Assembly: GCA_000320545.1 (NCBI GenBank)
Contig: ADNK01003302.1
Location: forward strand, 62,001 to 126,000
Source of the DNA: Bigelowiella natans CCMP2755
Lineage: Eukaryota > Protista > Cercozoa
DNA: 64,000 nt
Reading direction: 5' to 3'
The notes beneath the pieces were generated by a model that worked only from the letters and a program-made list of their open reading frames with translations, was not told the DNA's origin and searched no databases. This document shows positions 7,327-17,016 of the stretch, in pieces (the first letter of the stretch is position 1; each line of letters starts with the position of its first letter). The position numbers and the translations under genes are program-made.

Positions 7327-7726
7327 ATGAGCAAGCGGCGGTTACGCGGAAGGAGAAAAGAAAGCGTATGGCAGTACCAAAACATCGCAGATAGCATATG
7401 TCCGACCATCTCTGTCTCCAAGTTCGTGGTAAAAAACAACATGTAAACGTGCACCCACGTCTCCCTTCAACTACGGGGCAGTGGGGAAAATCAATGACGT
7501 GAAATTGCCATACCCTATTGAACGATTTGTACTCGTTGCTGTAGTTTGCCTGAAGTTGTCCAACTGTTTTAGACGAGGAGCTCTGAGCCTAAAGGTGAGT
7601 CGAAACGTTACTTAATTGAAAATGCATACAAATGGCTCTCAAAGCAATCGTCGGCTGATCAATACGAGGTTCGTTTTCATTCCATACAATGAATTTTGTT
7701 TATTCATCATATCATAAGCCCACTTA

Positions 7727-7774
<48 letters not shown>

Positions 7775-10700
7775 CACATATGCACACATGCACATATGCA
7801 CACATGCACGCATCACGAACGCAACGTTTATCTTCTCTAATGTGTTACTTTTCAGATACTCAAGGTGAGAAGCGATCCAGACTGGTTTCAAGCGTTTAGA
7901 TCTATTTGTGAGACATGCCGCAAGGAGAAAGTTGACGGCGTGTTCATCTTTGTGGAGTCTTCTGATTTCAGTATTGGACAGGATAGGCATTCAAATCACT
8001 TTAGGTTTTTACGATGGGATCAGCTCATTGGCAATATGGTGATGGAAAAGGATCGCTCGCCTACAAGTTCCCATAGCAAGAAAGAAGAGGATGCTGAGAA
8101 ATGTGCCGAGAATGTAGGTGCACAACGTCTCACGAGTAATAGTAGAGACGACGATGGAGGCGGCAGTAGCAGCAGCAGCAGCAGCAGCAAAGAGAACAAA
8201 CAAATAGCTGGAGAGCGTCAAAACTACCAAAACGTCCACTTCAGCGGCAACAATGAATCCCGTGAGCTTTTGCAGAGCCTTCGTGTCGGCATCAGGAAGA
8301 AAGAAGGGATCGAATTAAGTCTCGATCCCGAAATTCTACGCACTCGTGGAATGAGAGACGTGCAGTATCTGTTAGACATAGCAAGCACTGAGCACTACTT
8401 AGCTCATGCAGGGACTATTCACGACCGCTTTCTTAACACTGTCATTCAAACGGGCCGTCTAGATCCATTGGCAGAGGTTGCTCACCACACTCGAGGTTGC
8501 GTTCCGGAGATGGTGAAAGTGTGTGTTTATTCGGTAATTCTGTCTCTGATAACAAATGCAACCCGCAACTTAACATATAAAAACATTTTGAATGCTTCTT
8601 GATGGGGAACATGTAAAAGAAGCAAAACAGTCCCAAAGTTGCCTTGCAGCCTCAAAACCTCTTTCTCATCTTGCAGGTAGCGGCGTTTGTGGCAAAGCGA
8701 ATCCAGATGGCTTTGGTGGCAAGCTTTCAAGCTGCTGCCACCACCTCTTCTGCTTCTTTGTCTGCTTCTAATTCCCTCTCCGCCCTCCCCAACAGTACTG
8801 CTGCCAGTAGTAGTACTCGTGCGGGATCATCAACTTTACACATATCGAACAGCAGCCATACTGCGCACCACCACCACCACGCTAGCAACCCTCAATGGTC
8901 TATCTCAGGAGGAGGGGGAGGGGGGAACCATCAATATCACCAGCAACAATTAAATGGTAGCAATGATAGATCATCATCATCTGGTTTTTACCACCATCAC
9001 CACCACCACCACCCATCATCATCATCATTCTCTTCTTCCTCATCATCTTCCAACAAGAACAAAGAACGCCGTGACCCCAAGCACATTATGCGAGCATGGG
9101 CTGCCTTGGATAAGCCGAACCGCAAGTTGATCTTACAACGCCTTGAAAGGCAAGAGGCAAAAGAGGAAACTGGTATCGAGATGGGAGCGCTCGTGAAGGT
9201 GCTCGATATGTTTCTCGATAGCGGTGTTGATATTTTCACCATTGAAGAGTGGTTGAAGCCTGCTTTCGTCCCTTCGATCGAGAGCGCTCGAGATGCCTTA
9301 CTGACCAACATTTCAAGATTAATAGGAGAAGACTTGCTCAACAGTGAAGAAGCTTTGGCCAGGAGAATTCTCAACCAAAAGCGCAAACGTGTGGTAAAAA
9401 AAAAACGGCGAAAAGAGCGTCAGGCTGCGATGCAGGCCGCCGTCCAAGAGCGTGAACGGCTTAAGAGAGAGAAGAAAGCGGCACAAGAGCTTGAAGAGAA
9501 AACAAGGAGGGAGAAGAAAAGAAGAGAGCGTAAGAGGAACAACCAACTGCAACAGCAAATGCGGCAACTTCATCATCGTCATCATCACACAAAGACAGTG
9601 GTAGCAGCAGCAGCAGTTCCACCCGGTTGGCAATATGCAGAAGACATTGTTGATGAAGATCCCCCGCCGGGAACTAAGAACAATTTAAGCCACAATGATA
9701 GTAGTGGTAGCACGAATAATGTTAGTACTATTACTAATAAAACTAATATTGGTAGTAGTTATAGTAGTAGTAGTAGTAGTTGTTGTAGTGGTCGTTACGT
9801 AGAACTTAGCAGCAAAGGAGGCACAAGTAGCTGCAATGGCCAGCATCGCAGTGGTGGGAGAGTCACTACTACCATCAAGAAAGGGGGGGGGGGACGGCGA
9901 CGCTTAAAGAGCGGAAAGTCACGCTCTCGCAGTGGTACTCGGAGAAAGAATAAAGAACATCAGAAGATCTTAATGATAGTTGCTCCCCCACCTCGTGCCG
10001 AGGTCGAAGCTACCTGCCGCAGCATCATTCTAGGTCCGTTGATGAGCAAGACCTTTGCGAATGTGGCTAAAAGGCAAGCTAGACGTGTGAAGAAGAAACT
10101 CAAGAAGGAAAGGAAACAAAGACAGTTTATGTGCAGAGAGTTACTACTTAATTCTATTGTAGGGCCTGCCTTGGATGTTGCCTCGAGCTGCCATAGATTA
10201 TTAGAAGGAGGGTGCTCCTATTATGAAGCGAAAGAAGAAGAAGAAGAAGAAGAAGAAGAAGAGGGAGAAGAAGAAGAGGAAAAGGAGGTTGTAGAAGTAG
10301 GAGGTAGTACAGATTTGAAGGAATATACTACTACTACCACATCTGTAAGCAACACCATGACAGGAGCGGAAGGATCAGCAGTTGCTGAGCCAATAAAAAA
10401 AGATGTGAAGGAAGCAGGGGGGGGAGCATCAAAGTCGAAGAAGAAGAAGCCAATTACAACTAGGATTGCTTCTACACGCACTACTAATACTGCTACTAGC
10501 ATTCCTATAAAAAAGAATAGTATGATGAAGAAGGCCCAGCAGCAATCACTCAGTACTGCTGCTACTGCCACTTGTGAGGGGGATGAGGGGAAAGAGGTGA
10601 AACCTAAAGAGGAATTAGTGAGTAATCATCATCCAAGTACTCACCAGCGTATAATCAAGGCCCTACAAAATACAAGGCTCTTGCCTGCAAGCATTAGCAC

Positions 10701-11151
10701 AACTTCCCCCCCTCCCACCAATCATCAGGAAGGAGCAGGGGCAGCAGCGACTGCGGCGACTATAGGTAGAAATCATACAGCAGAGAACTATACTGACAGC
10801 AAAATCACAACAACAACAACAACAACAACAACAGCAACACATGTATAAACCACAGAAGGAGCTCGTACATATTATCGCACTACTACCCTCATGACTGCTG
10901 TTGACCTTATATATTCTTCCATTTCTAAAGGTACTCCTCCTCCTCCTCCTCCTCCTCCTCCTCCTGCTCCTCCTCGTACAAGTGCGCTGCAGCAACCTAA
11001 CCGCAAGCAACAGAAGAAACACATGGTGCATGACAACTATGTGTCATCAGTACTACGGCAGCAGCAGCAGCAGTCCTCCTCTTCCTCCCCTCTCCATCAT
11101 CGTCCTCCTCGCCCTCCGCACCATCATCACCACTATCATCACCCTCGGCAT

Positions 11152-11182
<31 letters not shown>

Positions 11183-13742
11183 GTAGATTTGGTAGTAGTA
11201 GTGCTGATCAGCCCCCTACAAACAGCAACGACGCCAATCTACTCGCACAGGCGTCTATGGTGCAAGGTAAGGTGCCGAACATCGATCCTCTCTCCCCCTC
11301 CTCCCTTAGGCTTCATCGTACTGTTCTCAACGGTATCGATGCGTGTGCAAATTATGTCGAGCAGGCAGGGGGGGCAGATATAGTAAAGCAACTGCACCAC
11401 AATGTCCACGATATGGCCTCGGCCTTAAACGCATTGAGCCTTGAGCGTCGTCCGATTCAAATGGCAGTCGTCAACGCTCTTCGTGTGGTTGTAACATCTC
11501 TCTGGCCAGGTGCTCGGGTAGAGGTATATGGTTCCTTCGCAACGCAACTGTGTGCGCCATCGTCCGACATCGATCTTGTAGTGTGTGATGTAGTTCAGCA
11601 CTATCAATCCATATTATCTGACATAAAGCCCAAGGAGTCGTGTGTTGCTCAGCTTGCACGGCATCTAAGGAAACAGCACTGGGTACAGGTTGTGCAGACG
11701 ATTGAACGAGCGGCAGTACCAATTGTCAAGGTGACTGCCACCTTCCAAGAAGCTGCAGGAATCCAGATTGATCTCTCTTTCGATTCCCCCTCACACCGTG
11801 GACTATCTACTTGTGCATTCGTACGAGGCTTGTGCGCTGAGTTTCCCATGCTCGTCCCCCTGACCTTGGTGTTGAAGCAGTTTCTAGTCACTACCGGCCT
11901 CAACGATCCGTATTCTGGTGGTCTCTCTTCCTATGGCCTTGTGCTCATGATTACTCGTGTATTGCAGCGAGATCGACTTTACCGTCAATATATAAAAGCT
12001 ATGGCAGTAGAAGACACTGCTGCTGCTGCTGCTGCTGAACGTGGCGAAAGCGCTAGGGATAACAACATCATCAACAACAACACAACCCTGACAACAAAGG
12101 CGACAGCAGCAGCTACAAAGCGGACAAAAGTAGTAGCAGCACCAGTAACAAAGACAACAAAGACAACACAGCAGCAGCGGAGGACAACACAGGTGGAGCA
12201 GCAGCTTTATGATGGTCATCATCATAACCACCAGCAGCACCAGGAGGAGAAGGAGGAGGAGAAAAAAGGGAATATAATTATCATCCCAGCGAAGACCGGG
12301 GAAGAAACACTAAGTAGTACTGATGAAAATAATGTTGAAGAAGAAATTGTAGCAGTATCAGCAGCAACAACAGAGAAATTTAGAAAGAAGGAACTACAAC
12401 GACGAGGAGGAGGAATTGATTGTAGAGGAGGACCTAAGAACAATACCACCGCTGCTGCTGCTGCACTATTCTTGTCATCTTGCTTTTCATCGGATGATGC
12501 CTCTTCTCGCTACGAGGCCCAACGACTTAGAGAGATATTTGGCCGCAACTTTGAGCTTGGCCGCCTTTTCGTCACTTTCCTTGCCGAGTAATATATTATT
12601 CCAGAAACGATGTTAGGATTTACTCATTTTCCCTATCACTTGCGAACTGACAGCACAACTGATGAAGTTGAGATTGTTACGTTATCAACATTGCATTATT
12701 TGAGAAGCATAGGAGCAAACCTGTCTTGATGCTTTGGTAATAATCTTCCTATATGTTTTCAATGTAGGTATGGTCGTGTGTTTGAGCCGATGCGAAACGC
12801 TATATCGGTATTTAACCAAGCGGAGGAGTCCGACTTCGTGTTTGCAGGAGCAAAGTATCGCCGACTATTTCTCGGTGACCCTCTAGCCATTATCGATCCT
12901 TTCGATCCGACCAACAATATCGGGCGGACATGCTATGGAATTGGCCAGATCCAGAGAGAATTCGATGCAGCGCTAACAAAGATTCAAGAACGCTCTGAGA
13001 CATGCACGCTGCAGCAGGTGCATCATCCACAGCAAGAGCGAGCGTACAGCAACAGCAGTTTCTGGGGGGGGGGGGAATATACGAGGACTTCGGCGGCAGT
13101 GGAGACGCTGAGGAATAACAGCAAAAGCAAGCAGAAGAATGACGTGTCATTCTCCAATAGCAACAAATACAACGCTGACGTCAAGCAACGAAGTGGACAT
13201 CAGCACCACCACCATATACAGAATCAGCACTATTATTATTCTTCCCCTCACCCATACCGCGATGCTGCCGTTGGGCTCAGCAAGAAATCTGCCGCAACAA
13301 AAGCAGGGGGAGTGGTTGACTGGAAGAAAGTTAGAGCGATGAGCTCTGCAAGGACGGCGACAACGAAGAAAAGCAGCAAAGAGGTAAAACAGACATTTGC
13401 TGAGAAGCTACGATCTTCAAATCAGAAAGCTAAAGCTAAGAATGCTGCTTTGCCAACACGCACCAGTGGCATTCCAAGTAGCAGCAGTAGCAGTGGTTAC
13501 AATGAGAGCATAGGAAGTTCCTCGTCGCCTCCTCCTCCAATCGATAATAGTAGAAATAATAAAAATAGTTTGATCAAGCAAACACCCCTTGGTGCAGTGT
13601 TCAACACGCAGAATCACAGTTCCGTCGTCAGATACACTCGGCAGTTGCTCAAGCGAGCGCAACCACCTCAGCAGCAGAAGCGGCAGCCCACAAACTCAGC
13701 AGTGGCTGCAAGAACCACAAATCTTCCTCCTCCTCCTTCCCG

Positions 13743-13780
<38 letters not shown>

Positions 13781-14029
13781 GCCATCGAGATCGTCCACCA
13801 CAACATTCTACTACCAACGCCACGAGGAATGCTGCTGCTCACGAAGGTACAGCTGCTCTTCCGACAACTGCTAAGGCAACAACAACTCTACCAAGAGGAA
13901 GCTACAATGGTAATAATACTAATACTACCATTTCAACAGCGGCTATGGCAGTGGTAGGCTTAGATCAGCAACAGCAGCAGCAGGAGGAGGAGGAGGAGAA
14001 GGATGAGGGTATGATCCTGGGGGAGAGGG

Positions 14030-14062
<33 letters not shown>

Positions 14063-14371
14063 GCGCCGCTGCATTGAGTCAGCCCCTTCCGTCGCCGATG
14101 TTGCCTCCACCAGCACCCCCCATTCATCATCATCAACAACAACAACAAAAACAACCCCAACATCAACATCAGCAGCAGCACATGAGCATGCACAACGGCC
14201 AACCCCATCCTTCTCACCCTCACCACCGCCACCAGCAGCAGCAGCAGCAGCAACAACAACAACAACAGCTGGAGGAAAATAGCCACCACTTAGTACCAAC
14301 AGTCATTATGTCAGACCACAACAACTCAAACACCACTGCACTGCCAACAAAATTGGAGGCAGCAGCAGCAG

Positions 14372-14409
<38 letters not shown>

Positions 14410-16233
14410 CATCAGCAGCCGCCATCCATTGAGGGGCGAGGGCTCCGAGGAGCAAAGGAAGGTTCATCATCATCACCATACGGTGGAGTTTCTACTACTA
14501 CTACTACTACTACTACTACCGCGGTGACGACGACATATGAAACACCACCCTACCACTACCATCCTCCCCGCCATCATTATCATCCCCCCCCCTCTTATAC
14601 ACATTCCGACAATAGTTATAGTACAGCTATCGGTGGTGTCGTCATCGACGCATCATCAGCCCGTACTACCGCTACTACTACTACCGCATACCGCGGTAGT
14701 AGTAGTAGTAACCCCCCCATTCATCATCGCTATCATTTTCCACCACCACCAGGAGGAGGAGGAGGAGGAGGAAGAAGAAGGCATGGTGTAGGGGAAAGTA
14801 CTTCTCGTCAGCAGCCAAAGCAGCAGCAGCAGCAGGATCAGCAGATGTTGCATTATCATTCCTCGTTCGGTGAAAACTTTCATCCTTCGTCATCATCACT
14901 ACCCCACCCTTCCTCGTATACGGAGGGACAGAACCACAAGTTGACACCGTTGCAGAAGGGGGTGGAGAAAAATGCGGAAGGAGGAGAGGGTGCGCGTCTT
15001 GGAGTAGTAGTAGTAGTAGGGCTTATTATTCACCAAACTGTTGAGAAACTCCTCGACAAAGCAGCCGTAATTGCGGGTCTCGAAGAGGAGAGAAAAAGCG
15101 ACGATGTGGAGAAGCCAACAACAGCAGCAGCGGCACCGCTAGGGAGCAGCGAGAGTAGCAGAAGAAAACAGAGAGATTATGAGAAGGCACATAGGAAGAG
15201 AAGAAAGAAAATACCAACAATCAATTTCGTTGAGAAATCACTTGAGAAGATATTGGAACCTCCTCCTCCTCCTCCTCCTCCTCCTGACAACTGTGGCAGT
15301 CCTTGCCCAATAGGGATATGTGTACAAAGGATTCTTGATCTCGAGCAAGAAGTTGTAACTCGAGGCAGTGATGAAAGCAGCAGCAGTACTGGAAATGATA
15401 ACGTTGATAATAAAGCAACTAGTTCTTCTCCTTCTAAAGATGGTGACAACAAGTTGCTGCTTAGGGTTGCGCAAAACTCGAGAATCCACGACGAAAAGCA
15501 GGATCAAAGGGATGATATAATAGCACCAGATAGGATGATGATATCTGTAACATTATGGCGTCATCTCCTGGCACGATGCCTTATTAGCAAGGTTCTATCC
15601 CCGCCCCTTAATCTTCTCTTCTACCGCGCTCTCGAGAATGCGTGTCGAGGACCGCTCCCTTGGTTACGAAAACAGACAATGGTGCTCAGCCTTCAGTGTG
15701 CACGTGTCTTACTGATGAATAAGGGGGATGGCGTCGTCGGCACAGAGGGGCTTCTACCGTCATCATCATCACCCTCATCATCGCCATCATCATTACCATT
15801 ACCATCATCGTCGGAATATTACTATCGTATTTGGTCATCGGTGCTGCTGACACTTGGACAATGGATCGGTTCTATCACTCTAGCTGTTGATCGGCCAATA
15901 TGGCTTCGCCTGATCGATCTCAAGACCATACTTTCTGATGCTAAGCAGCAAGGTAATCTAGGTGCGGTCGTCCCTTTTGTTGTGGAGATCCTCAGTGCAT
16001 GCTGCGAATCGCGGGTGTTTCGCCTACCAAACCCATGGCTTGTGGCTGTGTTGAGAGCCGTGTACGCTATTCGAAGAGGGGATGGGGAGCGTGCTCCGCC
16101 GCAGCTGCAGGCGTTTGCTATTGATTCTTTATTCCGGAAGCTCGGTATAGAACCTGAGAAAGATCTAGCGCATGTTATGAGCACAGGGAAAAAGTACCAC
16201 GGGAGCAAAGCTAGAATGGAGTCGTACAGATGA
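7327..16233 (+). CDS. TRF4/TENT4-like non-canonical poly(A) polymerase with PAP-associated domain, long low-complexity regions and a C-terminal NOT1 MIF4G-like domain (~2700 aa)
   Basis: Phase-compatible GT-AG exons 7327-7428, 7573-7668, 7856-8518, 8677-10765, 10931-12587, 12768-16233; the 5' exons are less certain. NTase motif YGSFATQLCAPSSDIDL, third Asp in IQIDLSF, GGLSSYGL, and PAP-associated FLAEYGRVF...IIDPFDPTNNIGR. Confidence 0.85.
7730..7771 (+). repeat. (AC)n microsatellite in intron
   Basis: Uninterrupted acac run. Confidence 0.9.
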
Positions 16234-17016
16234 TAACGAAGAATTTATTACCGCTAATGTATGTATATGCATGTGATAAAGAAATTATGTCATACCTTCA
16301 AATACTGGTATGCATTTCTAGATGACCATCACTGGCATGGTGTTCTACTGAGAATCAGAAGAACACATTTACGCTACATAACATTGACTATAACAGAGAC
16401 CAGAGACCAAATGTATGCAGACCTTAGCTATGCTAGCATGTTGATGTGTGTACGTCCAAATCCTGCGTGACTTCCAGGCTCAGGGCGCGTCACATGCACA
16501 TGCTAGCATGCTCCGCTTGACATCGCTGCTTATTGCGATTGATGTTATCATCATCAGCGTGCGTTGCTACGCTAGCAATATCGCATCGTTGAAGTTTATA
16601 CGATACGTATCTGCAGATGTAGCTAGCATCGTAGTACAGATAGCTAGATAGCTGCACCGATGATCAGGCACTCATCCAGGCTAGCAGGCTAGCAGGGCAG
16701 ATACATACATCTAGACATGTCTATTATAGACGTGCATTACAATGAATTTCTCTCGATATATATAACACGATAGCGATGCGATGCGTCATTGCCACGTACA
16801 TAAAGCACAAACATGCGCATGCGATGTACCAGACTAGAACACACACGCACACACACACACACACACACGCACTTTAAATGCAGGCAGCATCGTGAGGCTA
16901 ATGTGTTTTCATTCTCATGGGCGTTACAAATTGCAGATGCTTGATTCATACATGTATGTTGAAAAATACCCCTTACCATTCTTGTTTAATTTCGAAGATG
17001 TAATGGAGAAATGCCA

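What the first reader, a model, noticed from the sequence alone, without database searches (positions are those of the whole stretch)
11500..16233. Tail-adding TRF4/TENT4-type polymerase fused to a NOT1 CAF1-binding MIF4G-like domain
Seen in sequence: the PAP-associated domain and the C-terminal LGQWIGSITLAVDRPIWLRLIDLKTIL...VVPFVVEILSACCESRVFRLPNPWL...IDSLFRKL (~15850-16160) lie in one uninterrupted ORF (12778-16233). Established: this closely resembles the CNOT1/Not1 MIF4G segment (LGxWLGxITLAxNKPI...VVPFVAKVL...FRPPNPW) that docks the CAF1 deadenylase. Inference: one polypeptide could both add tails and recruit or sequester CAF1-CCR4 independently of the NOT1 scaffold, a tail write/erase coupling I do not know from model organisms. 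Some interface positions look diverged.
Basis: partly seen in the sequence, partly recalled or inferred. Interest (0 to 1): 0.8.

Follow-up and report, generated by a model that had tools for sequence, protein, structure and literature searches.

The report
Tail-adding enzyme carrying NOT1's CAF1 dock
A marine alga (a chlorarachniophyte) and a few related protists make one very large protein. It joins an RNA tail-adding enzyme of the Trf4/TENT4 type to a copy of the NOT1 domain that normally holds the tail-removing nuclease CAF1, a combination not described before, but CAF1 binding is still untested.

Summary
ORF 12778-16233 (1151 codons, no stop) ends in a domain that matches Pfam CNOT1_CAF1_bind at 83-87 bits (cut-off 33.4). 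Its AlphaFold model superposes on the human NOT1 MIF4G domain at Z 18.9. The upstream exon encodes a Trf4-like nucleotidyltransferase with the GS, DxD and third-Asp motifs intact.

RNA contigs from three studies splice out intron 12588-12767 and join the two halves in frame. The only strong poly(A) site (16397/16402) lies after the MIF4G.

The same architecture occurs in other protists:
- one intronless 1157-aa ORF (P0001);
- a Gymnochlora transcript (P0005);
- P0006, P0154 and P0155.

Their MIF4G domains form one clade (support 100/98), apart from 42 NOT1 domains. The genome has a separate full NOT1 and one canonical CAF1.

The gene is larger than reported, about 7857-16233.

The CAF1-contacting loop (V-F-x-x-P-N-P-W) is invariant in the clade. 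Helix α1 and the E-x-N-F patch used by DDX6 are not kept. CAF1 docking is therefore the best-supported reading, but it is inferred, not shown.

I rate this a new variant of known kinds: a new domain architecture with no report found. Tail add/remove coupling in non-covalent complexes is already known.

The parts
7857..8533 (+). Exon encoding a conserved N-terminal region of unknown fold (DPDWF...DGVFIFVE...). At least one more exon lies upstream, ending near 7594.
   Evidence: tblastn of P0005 and P0006 is collinear with 7853-8536. Alignment A3. Acceptor and donor read from the sequence. No Pfam or Atlas match.
8677..10765 (+). Exon with a second conserved region (9052-9492), a lysine-rich stretch and the RIIKALQNTRLLP motif (10639-10713). 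The 3' boundary is inferred: putative GT..AG intron 10766-10930.
   Evidence: tblastn. ORF 8644-10848. Splice sites read. RNA depth is low in bin 10800-10996. The boundary was not seen directly in reads.
10931..12587 (+). Exon with the Trf4-like nucleotidyltransferase core: palm 11458-11787, GS...DxD at 11527-11583, third Asp in IQIDLSF at 11761-11781, and the start of the PAP-associated domain at 12556-12587.
   Evidence: Pfam PF22600 67.7 bits. Best solved relative is yeast Trf4 (3NYB) at 72 bits, against 38 bits or less for URT1 and Cid1. 68% identity over 275 aa to P0001. Motif coordinates.
12588..12767 (+). GT..AG intron of 180 nt that splits the PAP-associated domain.
   Evidence: The joint 12587->12768 appears in contigs of three runs from three studies, and depth drops about tenfold inside it. 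The joined reading ...FLAE|YGRVFEP matches P0005 and P0006.
12768..12990 (+). Rest of the PAP-associated domain (YGRVFEP...DPFDPTNNIGRTCYGIGQIQ).
   Evidence: 67% identity over 69 aa to P0001, whose intact domain hits PF03828 at 24.6 bits.
12991..15555 (+). Open, low-complexity linker rich in S, T, P, Q, A and H, holding the family-specific motif PLGAVFNTQNHSSVVRYTRQLL at 13582-13659.
   Evidence: No stop codon. Composition. The motif is conserved in P0001, P0005, P0006, P0154, P0155, P0157, P0167 and P0168. All non-repeat parts are covered by RNA contigs.
15556..16176 (+). NOT1-type MIF4G domain: eight confident helices matching human NOT1 1121-1299, with a low-complexity loop at 15718-15831. 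CAF1-contact loops lie at 15886-15924 (D-R-P-I-W...K) and 16006-16038 (S-R-V-F-R-L-P-N-P-W).
   Evidence: Pfam PF16415 83-87 bits. PDB sequence hits. AlphaFold model pLDDT 76. Foldseek's top 11 hits are all NOT1 MIF4G. VIA-align Z 18.9 to 4gmj_C. An RNA contig covers 14848-16405 unspliced.
16231..16402 (+). Stop codon (16231-16233) and 3' UTR up to the poly(A) sites at 16397 and 16402.
   Evidence: Raw RNA reads pile up at 16119-16512 with untemplated A-runs after 16397 and 16402. The genome has no A-run there.

Best explanation
Window 7857-16233 (+) is one gene of a chlorarachniophyte-type alga. It encodes at least 1720 aa from the ATG at 10891, and about 2700 aa with the upstream exons. In order, the protein has two lineage-specific N-terminal regions, a Trf4/TENT4-like terminal nucleotidyltransferase with an intact catalytic triad, a PAP-associated domain, a conserved LGAVF motif, a long disordered linker, and a C-terminal paralogue of the NOT1 MIF4G domain. 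Shown: the domains, the splice, the single 3' end, conservation of the architecture in at least five other sequences, a separate canonical NOT1 and one canonical CAF1. Inferred: the MIF4G paralogue still docks CAF1/POP2, and through it possibly CCR4. It keeps the CAF1-contacting loops but has lost helix α1 and the E-x-N-F patch that NOT1 uses for DDX6. The enzyme would then hold a 3'-5' poly(A) nuclease beside its own tailing site, outside the NOT1 scaffold. Tails it adds could be trimmed on the same RNA, either setting tail length as in GLD-2/PARN or tagging the RNA for decay as in TRAMP/exosome.
For: - One reading unit: the ORF has no stop for 1151 codons. Spliced contigs cover 11189-13724 and unspliced contigs cover 14848-16405 in three studies, with gaps only at repeats. 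There is one strong poly(A) peak, after the MIF4G.
- Conservation: P0001 has NTase, PAP_assoc and CNOT1_CAF1_bind (113.6 bits) in one intronless ORF, L003 4836-8474. P0005 is a Gymnochlora MMETSP transcript with the same three domains. P0006 has the NTase and the CNOT1_CAF1_bind domain; Pfam finds no PAP_assoc in it. P0154 and P0155 score 135-139 bits on PF16415.
- Library search: the fusion family scores 137-366 bits, then a gap to NOT1 proteins at 99 bits or less.
- Tree: the fusion MIF4G domains form one clade at 100/98.
- Fold: Z 18.9, rmsd 3.2 Å, 185 residues aligned to 4gmj_C. NOT1 chains score 4 to 6 Z units above the next best fold.
- CAF1-contact positions of Petit 2012 (PMC3510486): V1251, F1252, P1255, N1256, P1257 and W1258 are kept in all 9 fusion-family sequences (V1251 as V or I). 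K1218 is kept in 7 of the 8 sequences where the position aligns. P1209 is kept in 5 of 9.
- DDX6 side: E1137, whose E1137R mutation abolishes DDX6 binding (PMC4138323), is Pro or Gln in the members where this stretch aligns. Helix α1 is not modelled or aligned.
- Partners exist: NOT1 on C1203 (identical to P0096 over the aligned MIF4G) has all NOT1 domains. CAF1 on C1219 scores 147.7 bits to human CNOT7.
- Catalysis: GS, DID and IQIDLSF are present and align to Trf4.
Against: - No binding data and no complex model exist.
- The invariant F-x-x-P-N-P-W loop also has a structural role (a cis-proline and loop packing; Petit 2012), so its conservation may reflect fold rather than partner.
- Several contact positions differ: N1207D, H1212L, V1250R, P1254L and L1211W.
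- In the P0154/P0155/P0028 subclade P1209 is Ala or Val.
- The organism's CAF1 itself differs from human CNOT7 at A137G, E138A, M141I, I184L and L187T.
- No single read or contig spans the repeats between 13725 and 14847, so full-length continuity of the mRNA rests on depth, the open frame and the orthologues.
- Nucleotide specificity and activity are untested.
Confidence: 0.55

Rival explanations
1. The fusion protein is real, but its MIF4G paralogue no longer binds CAF1. It has been repurposed to bind another partner, such as a DEAD-box or other helicase as most MIF4G domains do, another nuclease such as the PARN-like gene on C3574, or the enzyme's own catalytic core.
For: - The fusion clade sits on a long stem (0.61 changes per column in the 136-row tree; about 0.7 between the two clades).
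- It has clade-specific invariant residues not found in NOT1: Trp in D-R-P-I-W and the P-P-x-N-L-L-F/Y motif.
- Several CAF1-contact positions have changed, and P1209 is lost in one subclade.
- MIF4G domains commonly regulate DEAD-box proteins (PMC5096884).
Against: - The surface NOT1 uses for DDX6 is the part that is missing or changed: α1 is absent and E1137 is Pro or Gln.
- The central CAF1 knob P1257/W1258 with F1252 and V1251 is invariant in all nine members, including the very divergent P0157.
Confidence: 0.3
2. The domain binds CAF1 but acts as a decoy. By competing with NOT1 for the single CAF1, it protects the tails the enzyme has just added, so it antagonises deadenylation rather than coupling to it.
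For: - Only one canonical CAF1 locus was found, so NOT1 and the fusion would share it.
- A precedent exists for a NOT1 paralogue that opposes NOT1: Plasmodium NOT1-G (PMC8562791).
- TENT4 enzymes are known to counteract CCR4-NOT (PMC11102861).
Against: - In the NOT1-CAF1 structure the nuclease active site stays open when docked (Petit 2012), so docking alone should not inhibit it.
- Nothing in the sequence speaks to stoichiometry.
- The genome search counts are lower bounds.
Confidence: 0.1
3. Artefact: two adjacent genes, a polymerase and a NOT1 fragment, that merely share a frame through low-complexity repeats, or a decaying pseudogene.
For: No single RNA contig crosses the repeats at 13725-13795, 13961-14279, 14400-14534 and 14735-14847.
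Against: - The same architecture lies in single ORFs or transcripts with short, non-repetitive linkers in P0001, P0005, P0154 and P0155.
- There is no poly(A) peak between the domains.
- The chance of the open frame is 8e-25.
- The MIF4G is 47-54% identical to its orthologues, with invariant motifs.
Confidence: 0.03

Closest known systems
NOT1/CNOT1 MIF4G (CAF1-binding) domain of the CCR4-NOT scaffold (PF16415; PDB 4GMJ, 4B8A)
   Same: Same fold (Z 17-19). The profile match is well above the cut-off. The L(α8-α9) loop V-F-x-x-P-N-P-W, K1218 and, in this subclade, P1209 are kept.
   Different: It is not part of a NOT1 scaffold: there are no TTP-binding, DUF3819 or Not1 C-terminal domains. Helix α1 is missing and the DDX6 patch E-x-N-F is replaced by P-P-x-N-L. 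It carries clade-specific residues and a low-complexity loop insert. It forms a separate clade from 42 NOT1 domains.
Trf4/Trf5 (yeast TRAMP) and TENT4A/B non-canonical poly(A) polymerases
   Same: A Pol-β-type palm with GS, DxD and a third Asp, followed by a PAP-associated domain. Yeast Trf4 (3NYB) is the best solved match. Like TRAMP with the exosome, it may pair tailing with a 3'-5' nuclease.
   Different: It is far larger, with lineage-specific N-terminal regions and a C-terminal MIF4G. Orthology to Trf4/TENT4 was not tested by phylogeny, and the genome has at least five other PF22600 loci. Air and Mtr4 partners were not examined.
Non-covalent polymerase/deadenylase pairs: GLD-2 with PARN in the Xenopus CPEB complex; GLD-2/GLD-4 against CCR4-NOT in C. 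elegans (PMC2323027, PMC6845980)
   Same: A tail-adding and a tail-removing activity act on the same RNA in the same assembly.
   Different: In those systems the enzymes are brought together by RNA-binding proteins. Here the polymerase itself carries the deadenylase's scaffold domain.
Plasmodium NOT1-G, a NOT1 paralogue (PMC8562791)
   Same: A lineage-specific duplicate of NOT1 sequence that may assemble an alternative CAF1-containing complex.
   Different: NOT1-G is a full-length scaffold paralogue. Here only the MIF4G module was copied, and it is fused to an enzyme.

Membership tests
NOT1 CAF1-binding MIF4G domain (PF16415) | Profile match above the curated cut-off | tested here: met
   83.3 and 87.2 bits against a cut-off of 33.4. 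Orthologues score 80-139 bits.
NOT1 CAF1-binding MIF4G domain (PF16415) | MIF4G fold of five HEAT-like helical hairpins (ten helices) | tested here: inconclusive
   The model has eight confident helices that align to human 1121-1299 of the 1093-1317 domain (Z 18.9). The first helix is low-confidence and not conserved.
NOT1 CAF1-binding MIF4G domain (PF16415) | CAF1-contact residues in loops α6-α7 and α8-α9 (Petit 2012) | tested here: met
   The window keeps P1209, K1218, S1249, V1251, F1252, P1255, N1256, P1257 and W1258. It changes N1207D, K1208R, H1212L, V1250R and P1254L.
NOT1 CAF1-binding MIF4G domain (PF16415) | Physical binding of CAF1/POP2 | not testable with these tools
   No multimer prediction or binding assay is available. 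CAF1 is present in the genome.
NOT1 CAF1-binding MIF4G domain (PF16415) | DDX6/Dhh1-contact residues (α1 F1098/L1101; E1137, F1140) | tested here: not met
   E1137 is Pro and F1140 is Leu in the window. Helix α1 is not alignable.
NOT1 scaffold protein (orthologue of NOT1/CNOT1) | TTP-binding, DUF3819/CAF40-binding and Not1 C-terminal domains in the same protein | tested here: not met
   None was found in the window gene. They are present in the separate NOT1 on C1203, which matches P0096.
Trf4/TENT4-type non-canonical poly(A) polymerase (Cid1 family) | Pol-β nucleotidyltransferase palm with G-S, D-x-D and a third catalytic Asp | tested here: met
   YGSFATQLCAPSSDIDLVV at 11527-11583 and IQIDLSF at 11761-11781 align to Trf4. 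PF22600 scores 67.7 bits.
Trf4/TENT4-type non-canonical poly(A) polymerase (Cid1 family) | PAP-associated domain after the palm | tested here: met
   The domain is split by intron 12588-12767. The exons were searched separately. They are 67% identical to the P0001 domain, which passes PF03828 at 24.6 bits.
Trf4/TENT4-type non-canonical poly(A) polymerase (Cid1 family) | Closer to Trf4/TENT4 than to Cid1/TUT/GLD-2 subfamilies | tested here: inconclusive
   The best PDB hit is Trf4 at 72 bits, against 38 bits or less for URT1 and Cid1. For P0001 the scores are 83.7 and 49.8 bits. No NTase phylogeny was built.
Trf4/TENT4-type non-canonical poly(A) polymerase (Cid1 family) | Adenylyl (or mixed A/G) transferase activity on RNA 3' ends | not testable with these tools
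   This needs an enzyme assay.

The most novel reading that the evidence does not exclude
This protein is the scaffold of a NOT1-independent tail-editing machine. A Trf4-like polymerase holds CAF1, and perhaps CCR4, on its own C-terminus, so that addition and removal of adenosines happen on one particle. It would also be a natural 'Rosetta stone' fusion, predicting a direct physical link between TENT4-type polymerases and the CCR4-NOT nuclease module in other eukaryotes.
Probability: 0.35. Interest if true: 0.8.

Novelty: new variant of a known kind. Interest (0 to 1): 0.6.

Why it matters
Poly(A) tail length is set by competing polymerases and deadenylases. In the systems studied so far these are brought together by adaptor proteins. 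A conserved natural fusion of a Trf4/TENT4-like polymerase to the NOT1 module that holds CAF1 would show that evolution has hard-wired the two activities together at least once. It gives a simple, testable prediction: the MIF4G paralogue binds CAF1. It would also show that the CAF1-CCR4 nuclease module can be used outside the NOT1 scaffold. If binding fails, the domain is still a clean case of a NOT1 MIF4G module repurposed for a new partner.

Tried and rejected
- Two-gene or artefact reading: rejected on RNA and orthologue evidence.
- DDX6/helicase docking through the NOT1-type surface: judged unlikely because α1 and E1137 are not kept.
- Recent duplication from the lineage's own NOT1: neither supported nor rejected. 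The free tree places the fusion clade apart from all NOT1 domains, but the AU test gives p 0.23 for a position next to the genome's own NOT1.
- N-terminal regions: no Pfam hit, no Atlas hit, and an AlphaFold model from a 4-row alignment reached only pLDDT 51, so no inference was drawn.
- C-terminus of the same-genome paralogue: no Pfam hit.
- Literature: no paper found on a polymerase-NOT1 MIF4G fusion. A 2025 CCR4-NOT review contains neither 'nucleotidyltransferase' nor 'Rhizaria'.
- A first tree run timed out and was repeated with a simpler model.
- One PDB query was sent in the wrong frame and corrected.
- Spliced model: exons were searched one by one by reference.
Full report
**Observation**

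The window holds an uninterrupted ORF at 12778-16233 (+), 1151 codons. With its base composition the chance of no stop is about 8e-25. Its last ~230 residues match Pfam CNOT1_CAF1_bind (PF16415) at 83.3 bits, or 87.2 bits when scanned alone, against a cut-off of 33.4. The match covers profile positions 104-206 of 225. They also hit the solved yeast and human NOT1 MIF4G chains at E 2e-13 to 6e-13.

The preceding ORF, 10891-12591, carries the nucleotidyltransferase palm (PF22600, 67.7 bits). Yeast Trf4 (3NYB) is its best solved relative at 72 bits. URT1 and Cid1 score 38 bits or less. The G-S and D-I-D motifs (11527-11583) and the third Asp (IQIDLSF, 11761-11781) are present.

**Gene structure and RNA**

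A GT..AG intron at 12588-12767 separates the two ORFs. Contigs of three public runs from three studies carry the joint 12587->12768, so they are RNA-derived. The joined reading ...FLAE|YGRVFEP... matches the orthologues.

The RNA contigs cover these stretches:
- One spliced contig covers 11189-13724.
- Another covers 14848-16405 without any joint, including the low-complexity loop inside the MIF4G.
- The gaps between contigs (13725-13795, 13961-14279, 14400-14534, 14735-14847) coincide with simple repeats, where assembly graphs break.

A raw-read RNA run with strong 3' bias shows one large peak, at 16119-16512. It has untemplated A-runs after 16397 and 16402, where the genome has no A-run. There is no comparable 3' end between the polymerase and the MIF4G. 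No single molecule was seen to cross the repeats, so full continuity is inferred.

Orthologue-guided tblastn shows the gene reaches upstream to at least 7857. Further GT..AG introns read from the sequence are 7595-7856, 8534-8676 and probably 10766-10930. These three are inferred, not seen in reads.

**Relatives**

A word-index search with the C-terminal region found P0001. This 1157-aa protein has PF22600, PAP_assoc and CNOT1_CAF1_bind (113.6 bits) and is encoded by a single intronless ORF, L003 4836-8474.

The exhaustive representative search with a two-sequence profile gave four hits at 137-366 bits: P0001, P0005, P0006 and the fragment P0007. After a gap come NOT1 proteins at 99 bits or less. 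The further members are:
- P0005 is a transcriptome ORF of Gymnochlora sp. CCMP2014, a chlorarachniophyte. It has NTase, PAP_assoc and MIF4G.
- P0006 (JGI) has the NTase and the MIF4G. Pfam does not detect its PAP_assoc domain.
- P0154 and P0155 (Logan assemblies) are further fusions, scoring 135-139 bits on PF16415.
- P0157, from metagenomes, keeps a degenerate copy at 17.5 bits.
- An Amorphochlora model (P0156) is partial.

In a careful tree of 50 MIF4G domains the eight fusion-type domains form one clade (UFboot 100, SH-aLRT 98), opposite 42 NOT1 domains. The AU test does not reject a position next to the genome's own NOT1 (p 0.23), so the age of the duplication is open.

I did not verify the species.

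**Partners in the same genome**

A genome-wide PF16415 search finds only two loci. One is the window. The other is C1203 at 258.7 bits. It is identical over the aligned MIF4G to P0096, a gene model with TTP-binding, CAF1-binding, DUF3819 and Not1 C-terminal domains. A canonical CAF1/POP2 gene, split by introns, lies on C1219 and scores 147.7 bits to human CNOT7. The other CAF1-family hit, on C3574, looks PARN-like by eye.

At least six PF22600 loci exist. One of them, on C3295, is a close paralogue: 46% identity over 334 aa and the same post-PAP motif, but no MIF4G.

**Structure and interfaces**

The AlphaFold model of 15415-16230 has pLDDT 76 and pTM 0.71, with eight confident helices. Foldseek's top eleven hits are all NOT1 MIF4G chains. 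VIA-align gives Z 18.9, rmsd 3.2 Å and 185 aligned residues to 4gmj_C. Model residues 43-252 map to human 1121-1299. NOT1 chains score 4 to 6 Z units above other helical-repeat folds such as CDAN1, CWC22 and UPF2. The first helix of the NOT1 domain has no confident counterpart.

I compared the family with the contact lists in Petit et al. 2012 (PMC3510486).

| Human NOT1 position | State in the fusion family |
|---|---|
| V1251, F1252, P1255, N1256, P1257, W1258 | kept in all nine family members (V1251 as V or I) |
| K1218 | kept in 7 of the 8 members where it aligns |
| P1209 | kept in 5 of 9 (present in the window) |
| N1207, K1208, H1212, V1250, P1254 (window) | D, R, L, R, L |
| L1211 | Trp throughout the window's subclade |

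On the opposite face, E1137 is Pro in the window's subclade and Gln in P0154 and P0155. The E1137R mutation abolishes DDX6 binding (Rouya et al. 2014, PMC4138323). F1140 is Leu, Ile or Val. The CAF1 side is thus the better conserved one. These loop residues also have structural roles, so this is suggestive and not proof.

**Mechanism**

Shown: a conserved single protein joins an apparently active Trf4-like polymerase to a NOT1-type MIF4G, alongside a separate NOT1 and one CAF1. Inferred: the MIF4G docks CAF1, and via CAF1 possibly CCR4, next to the polymerase, outside NOT1. The added tails could then be trimmed on the same particle.

Rival readings:
- The domain is repurposed for another partner (confidence 0.3).
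- It acts as a decoy that withholds CAF1 from NOT1 (0.1).
- It is an artefact of two genes sharing a frame (0.03).

**Comparison and novelty**

Coupling of tail addition and removal is known in non-covalent complexes: GLD-2 with PARN under CPEB (PMC2323027) and GLD-2/GLD-4 against CCR4-NOT (PMC6845980). TRAMP with the exosome and TENT4 mixed tailing against CCR4-NOT I cite from my own knowledge and PMC11102861. A NOT1 paralogue with an opposing role is known in Plasmodium (PMC8562791).

I found no report of a polymerase fused to a NOT1 MIF4G. A 2025 review of CCR4-NOT diversity contains neither 'nucleotidyltransferase' nor 'Rhizaria'. Databases auto-name the fragment P0007 as a CAF1-binding-domain protein, so the domain hit itself is visible in public annotation. 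I class the finding as a new variant of known kinds and score interest at 0.6.

**Limits**

- There is no binding or activity test.
- No read spans the repeats.
- The taxa of P0001, P0154/P0155 and P0157 are unknown.
- NTase subfamily assignment rests on best hits, not on a tree.

Noticed in passing
G000:C3295 (L015 3069-6500, minus strand): A same-genome paralogue of the polymerase. It is 46% identical over 334 aa and has the same motif after the PAP domain and a similar lysine-rich upstream ORF (L015 7087-9825). It has no MIF4G, and its C-terminus has no Pfam match. The C-terminal module therefore seems exchangeable within this enzyme family.
   Followed up: partly
P0001 aa 230-268; P0005 about 583-615; P0006 about 554-590: An F-box (PF00646, 25.1 bits when scanned alone) sits upstream of the polymerase in orthologue P0001. 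It is weak in P0005 and P0006, and I could not see it in the window gene. It hints at a link to SCF ubiquitin ligases in some members.
   Followed up: partly
window 7857-8533 and 9052-9492: Two N-terminal regions conserved with P0005 and P0006 have no Pfam or ESM-Atlas match. An AlphaFold model from four sequences reached only pLDDT 51. Fold and function are unknown.
   Followed up: partly
window 13075: RNA contigs from three studies read C where the assembly has G. This changes codon 100 of ORF 12778 from Glu to Gln. It may be a strain difference or an assembly error.
   Followed up: no
G000:C1219 (L005 1201-2408): The canonical CAF1/POP2 gene is split by several short introns. Compared with human CNOT7 it differs at NOT1-contact positions A137G, E138A, M141I, I184L and L187T. 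NOT1 and the fusion both keep K1218, whose usual salt-bridge partner E138 is Ala here.
   Followed up: partly
window 13582-13659: The short motif PLGAVF-x-T-x-x-H-x-SVV-x-Y/F-x-RQL is conserved after the PAP-associated domain in all relatives, including those without a detectable MIF4G (P0157, P0167, P0168). It is a family signature of unknown role.
   Followed up: partly
window 7727-7775: A (CA)n microsatellite followed by CACATGCA-type repeats lies inside the intron just before exon 7857.
   Followed up: no
window 15718-15831: A Ser/Pro-rich low-complexity insert of about 38 aa sits in the loop between two MIF4G helices. It is retained in the mRNA contigs and absent from P0001 and P0005. It shows how freely this genome expands coding repeats inside folded domains.
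   Followed up: partly
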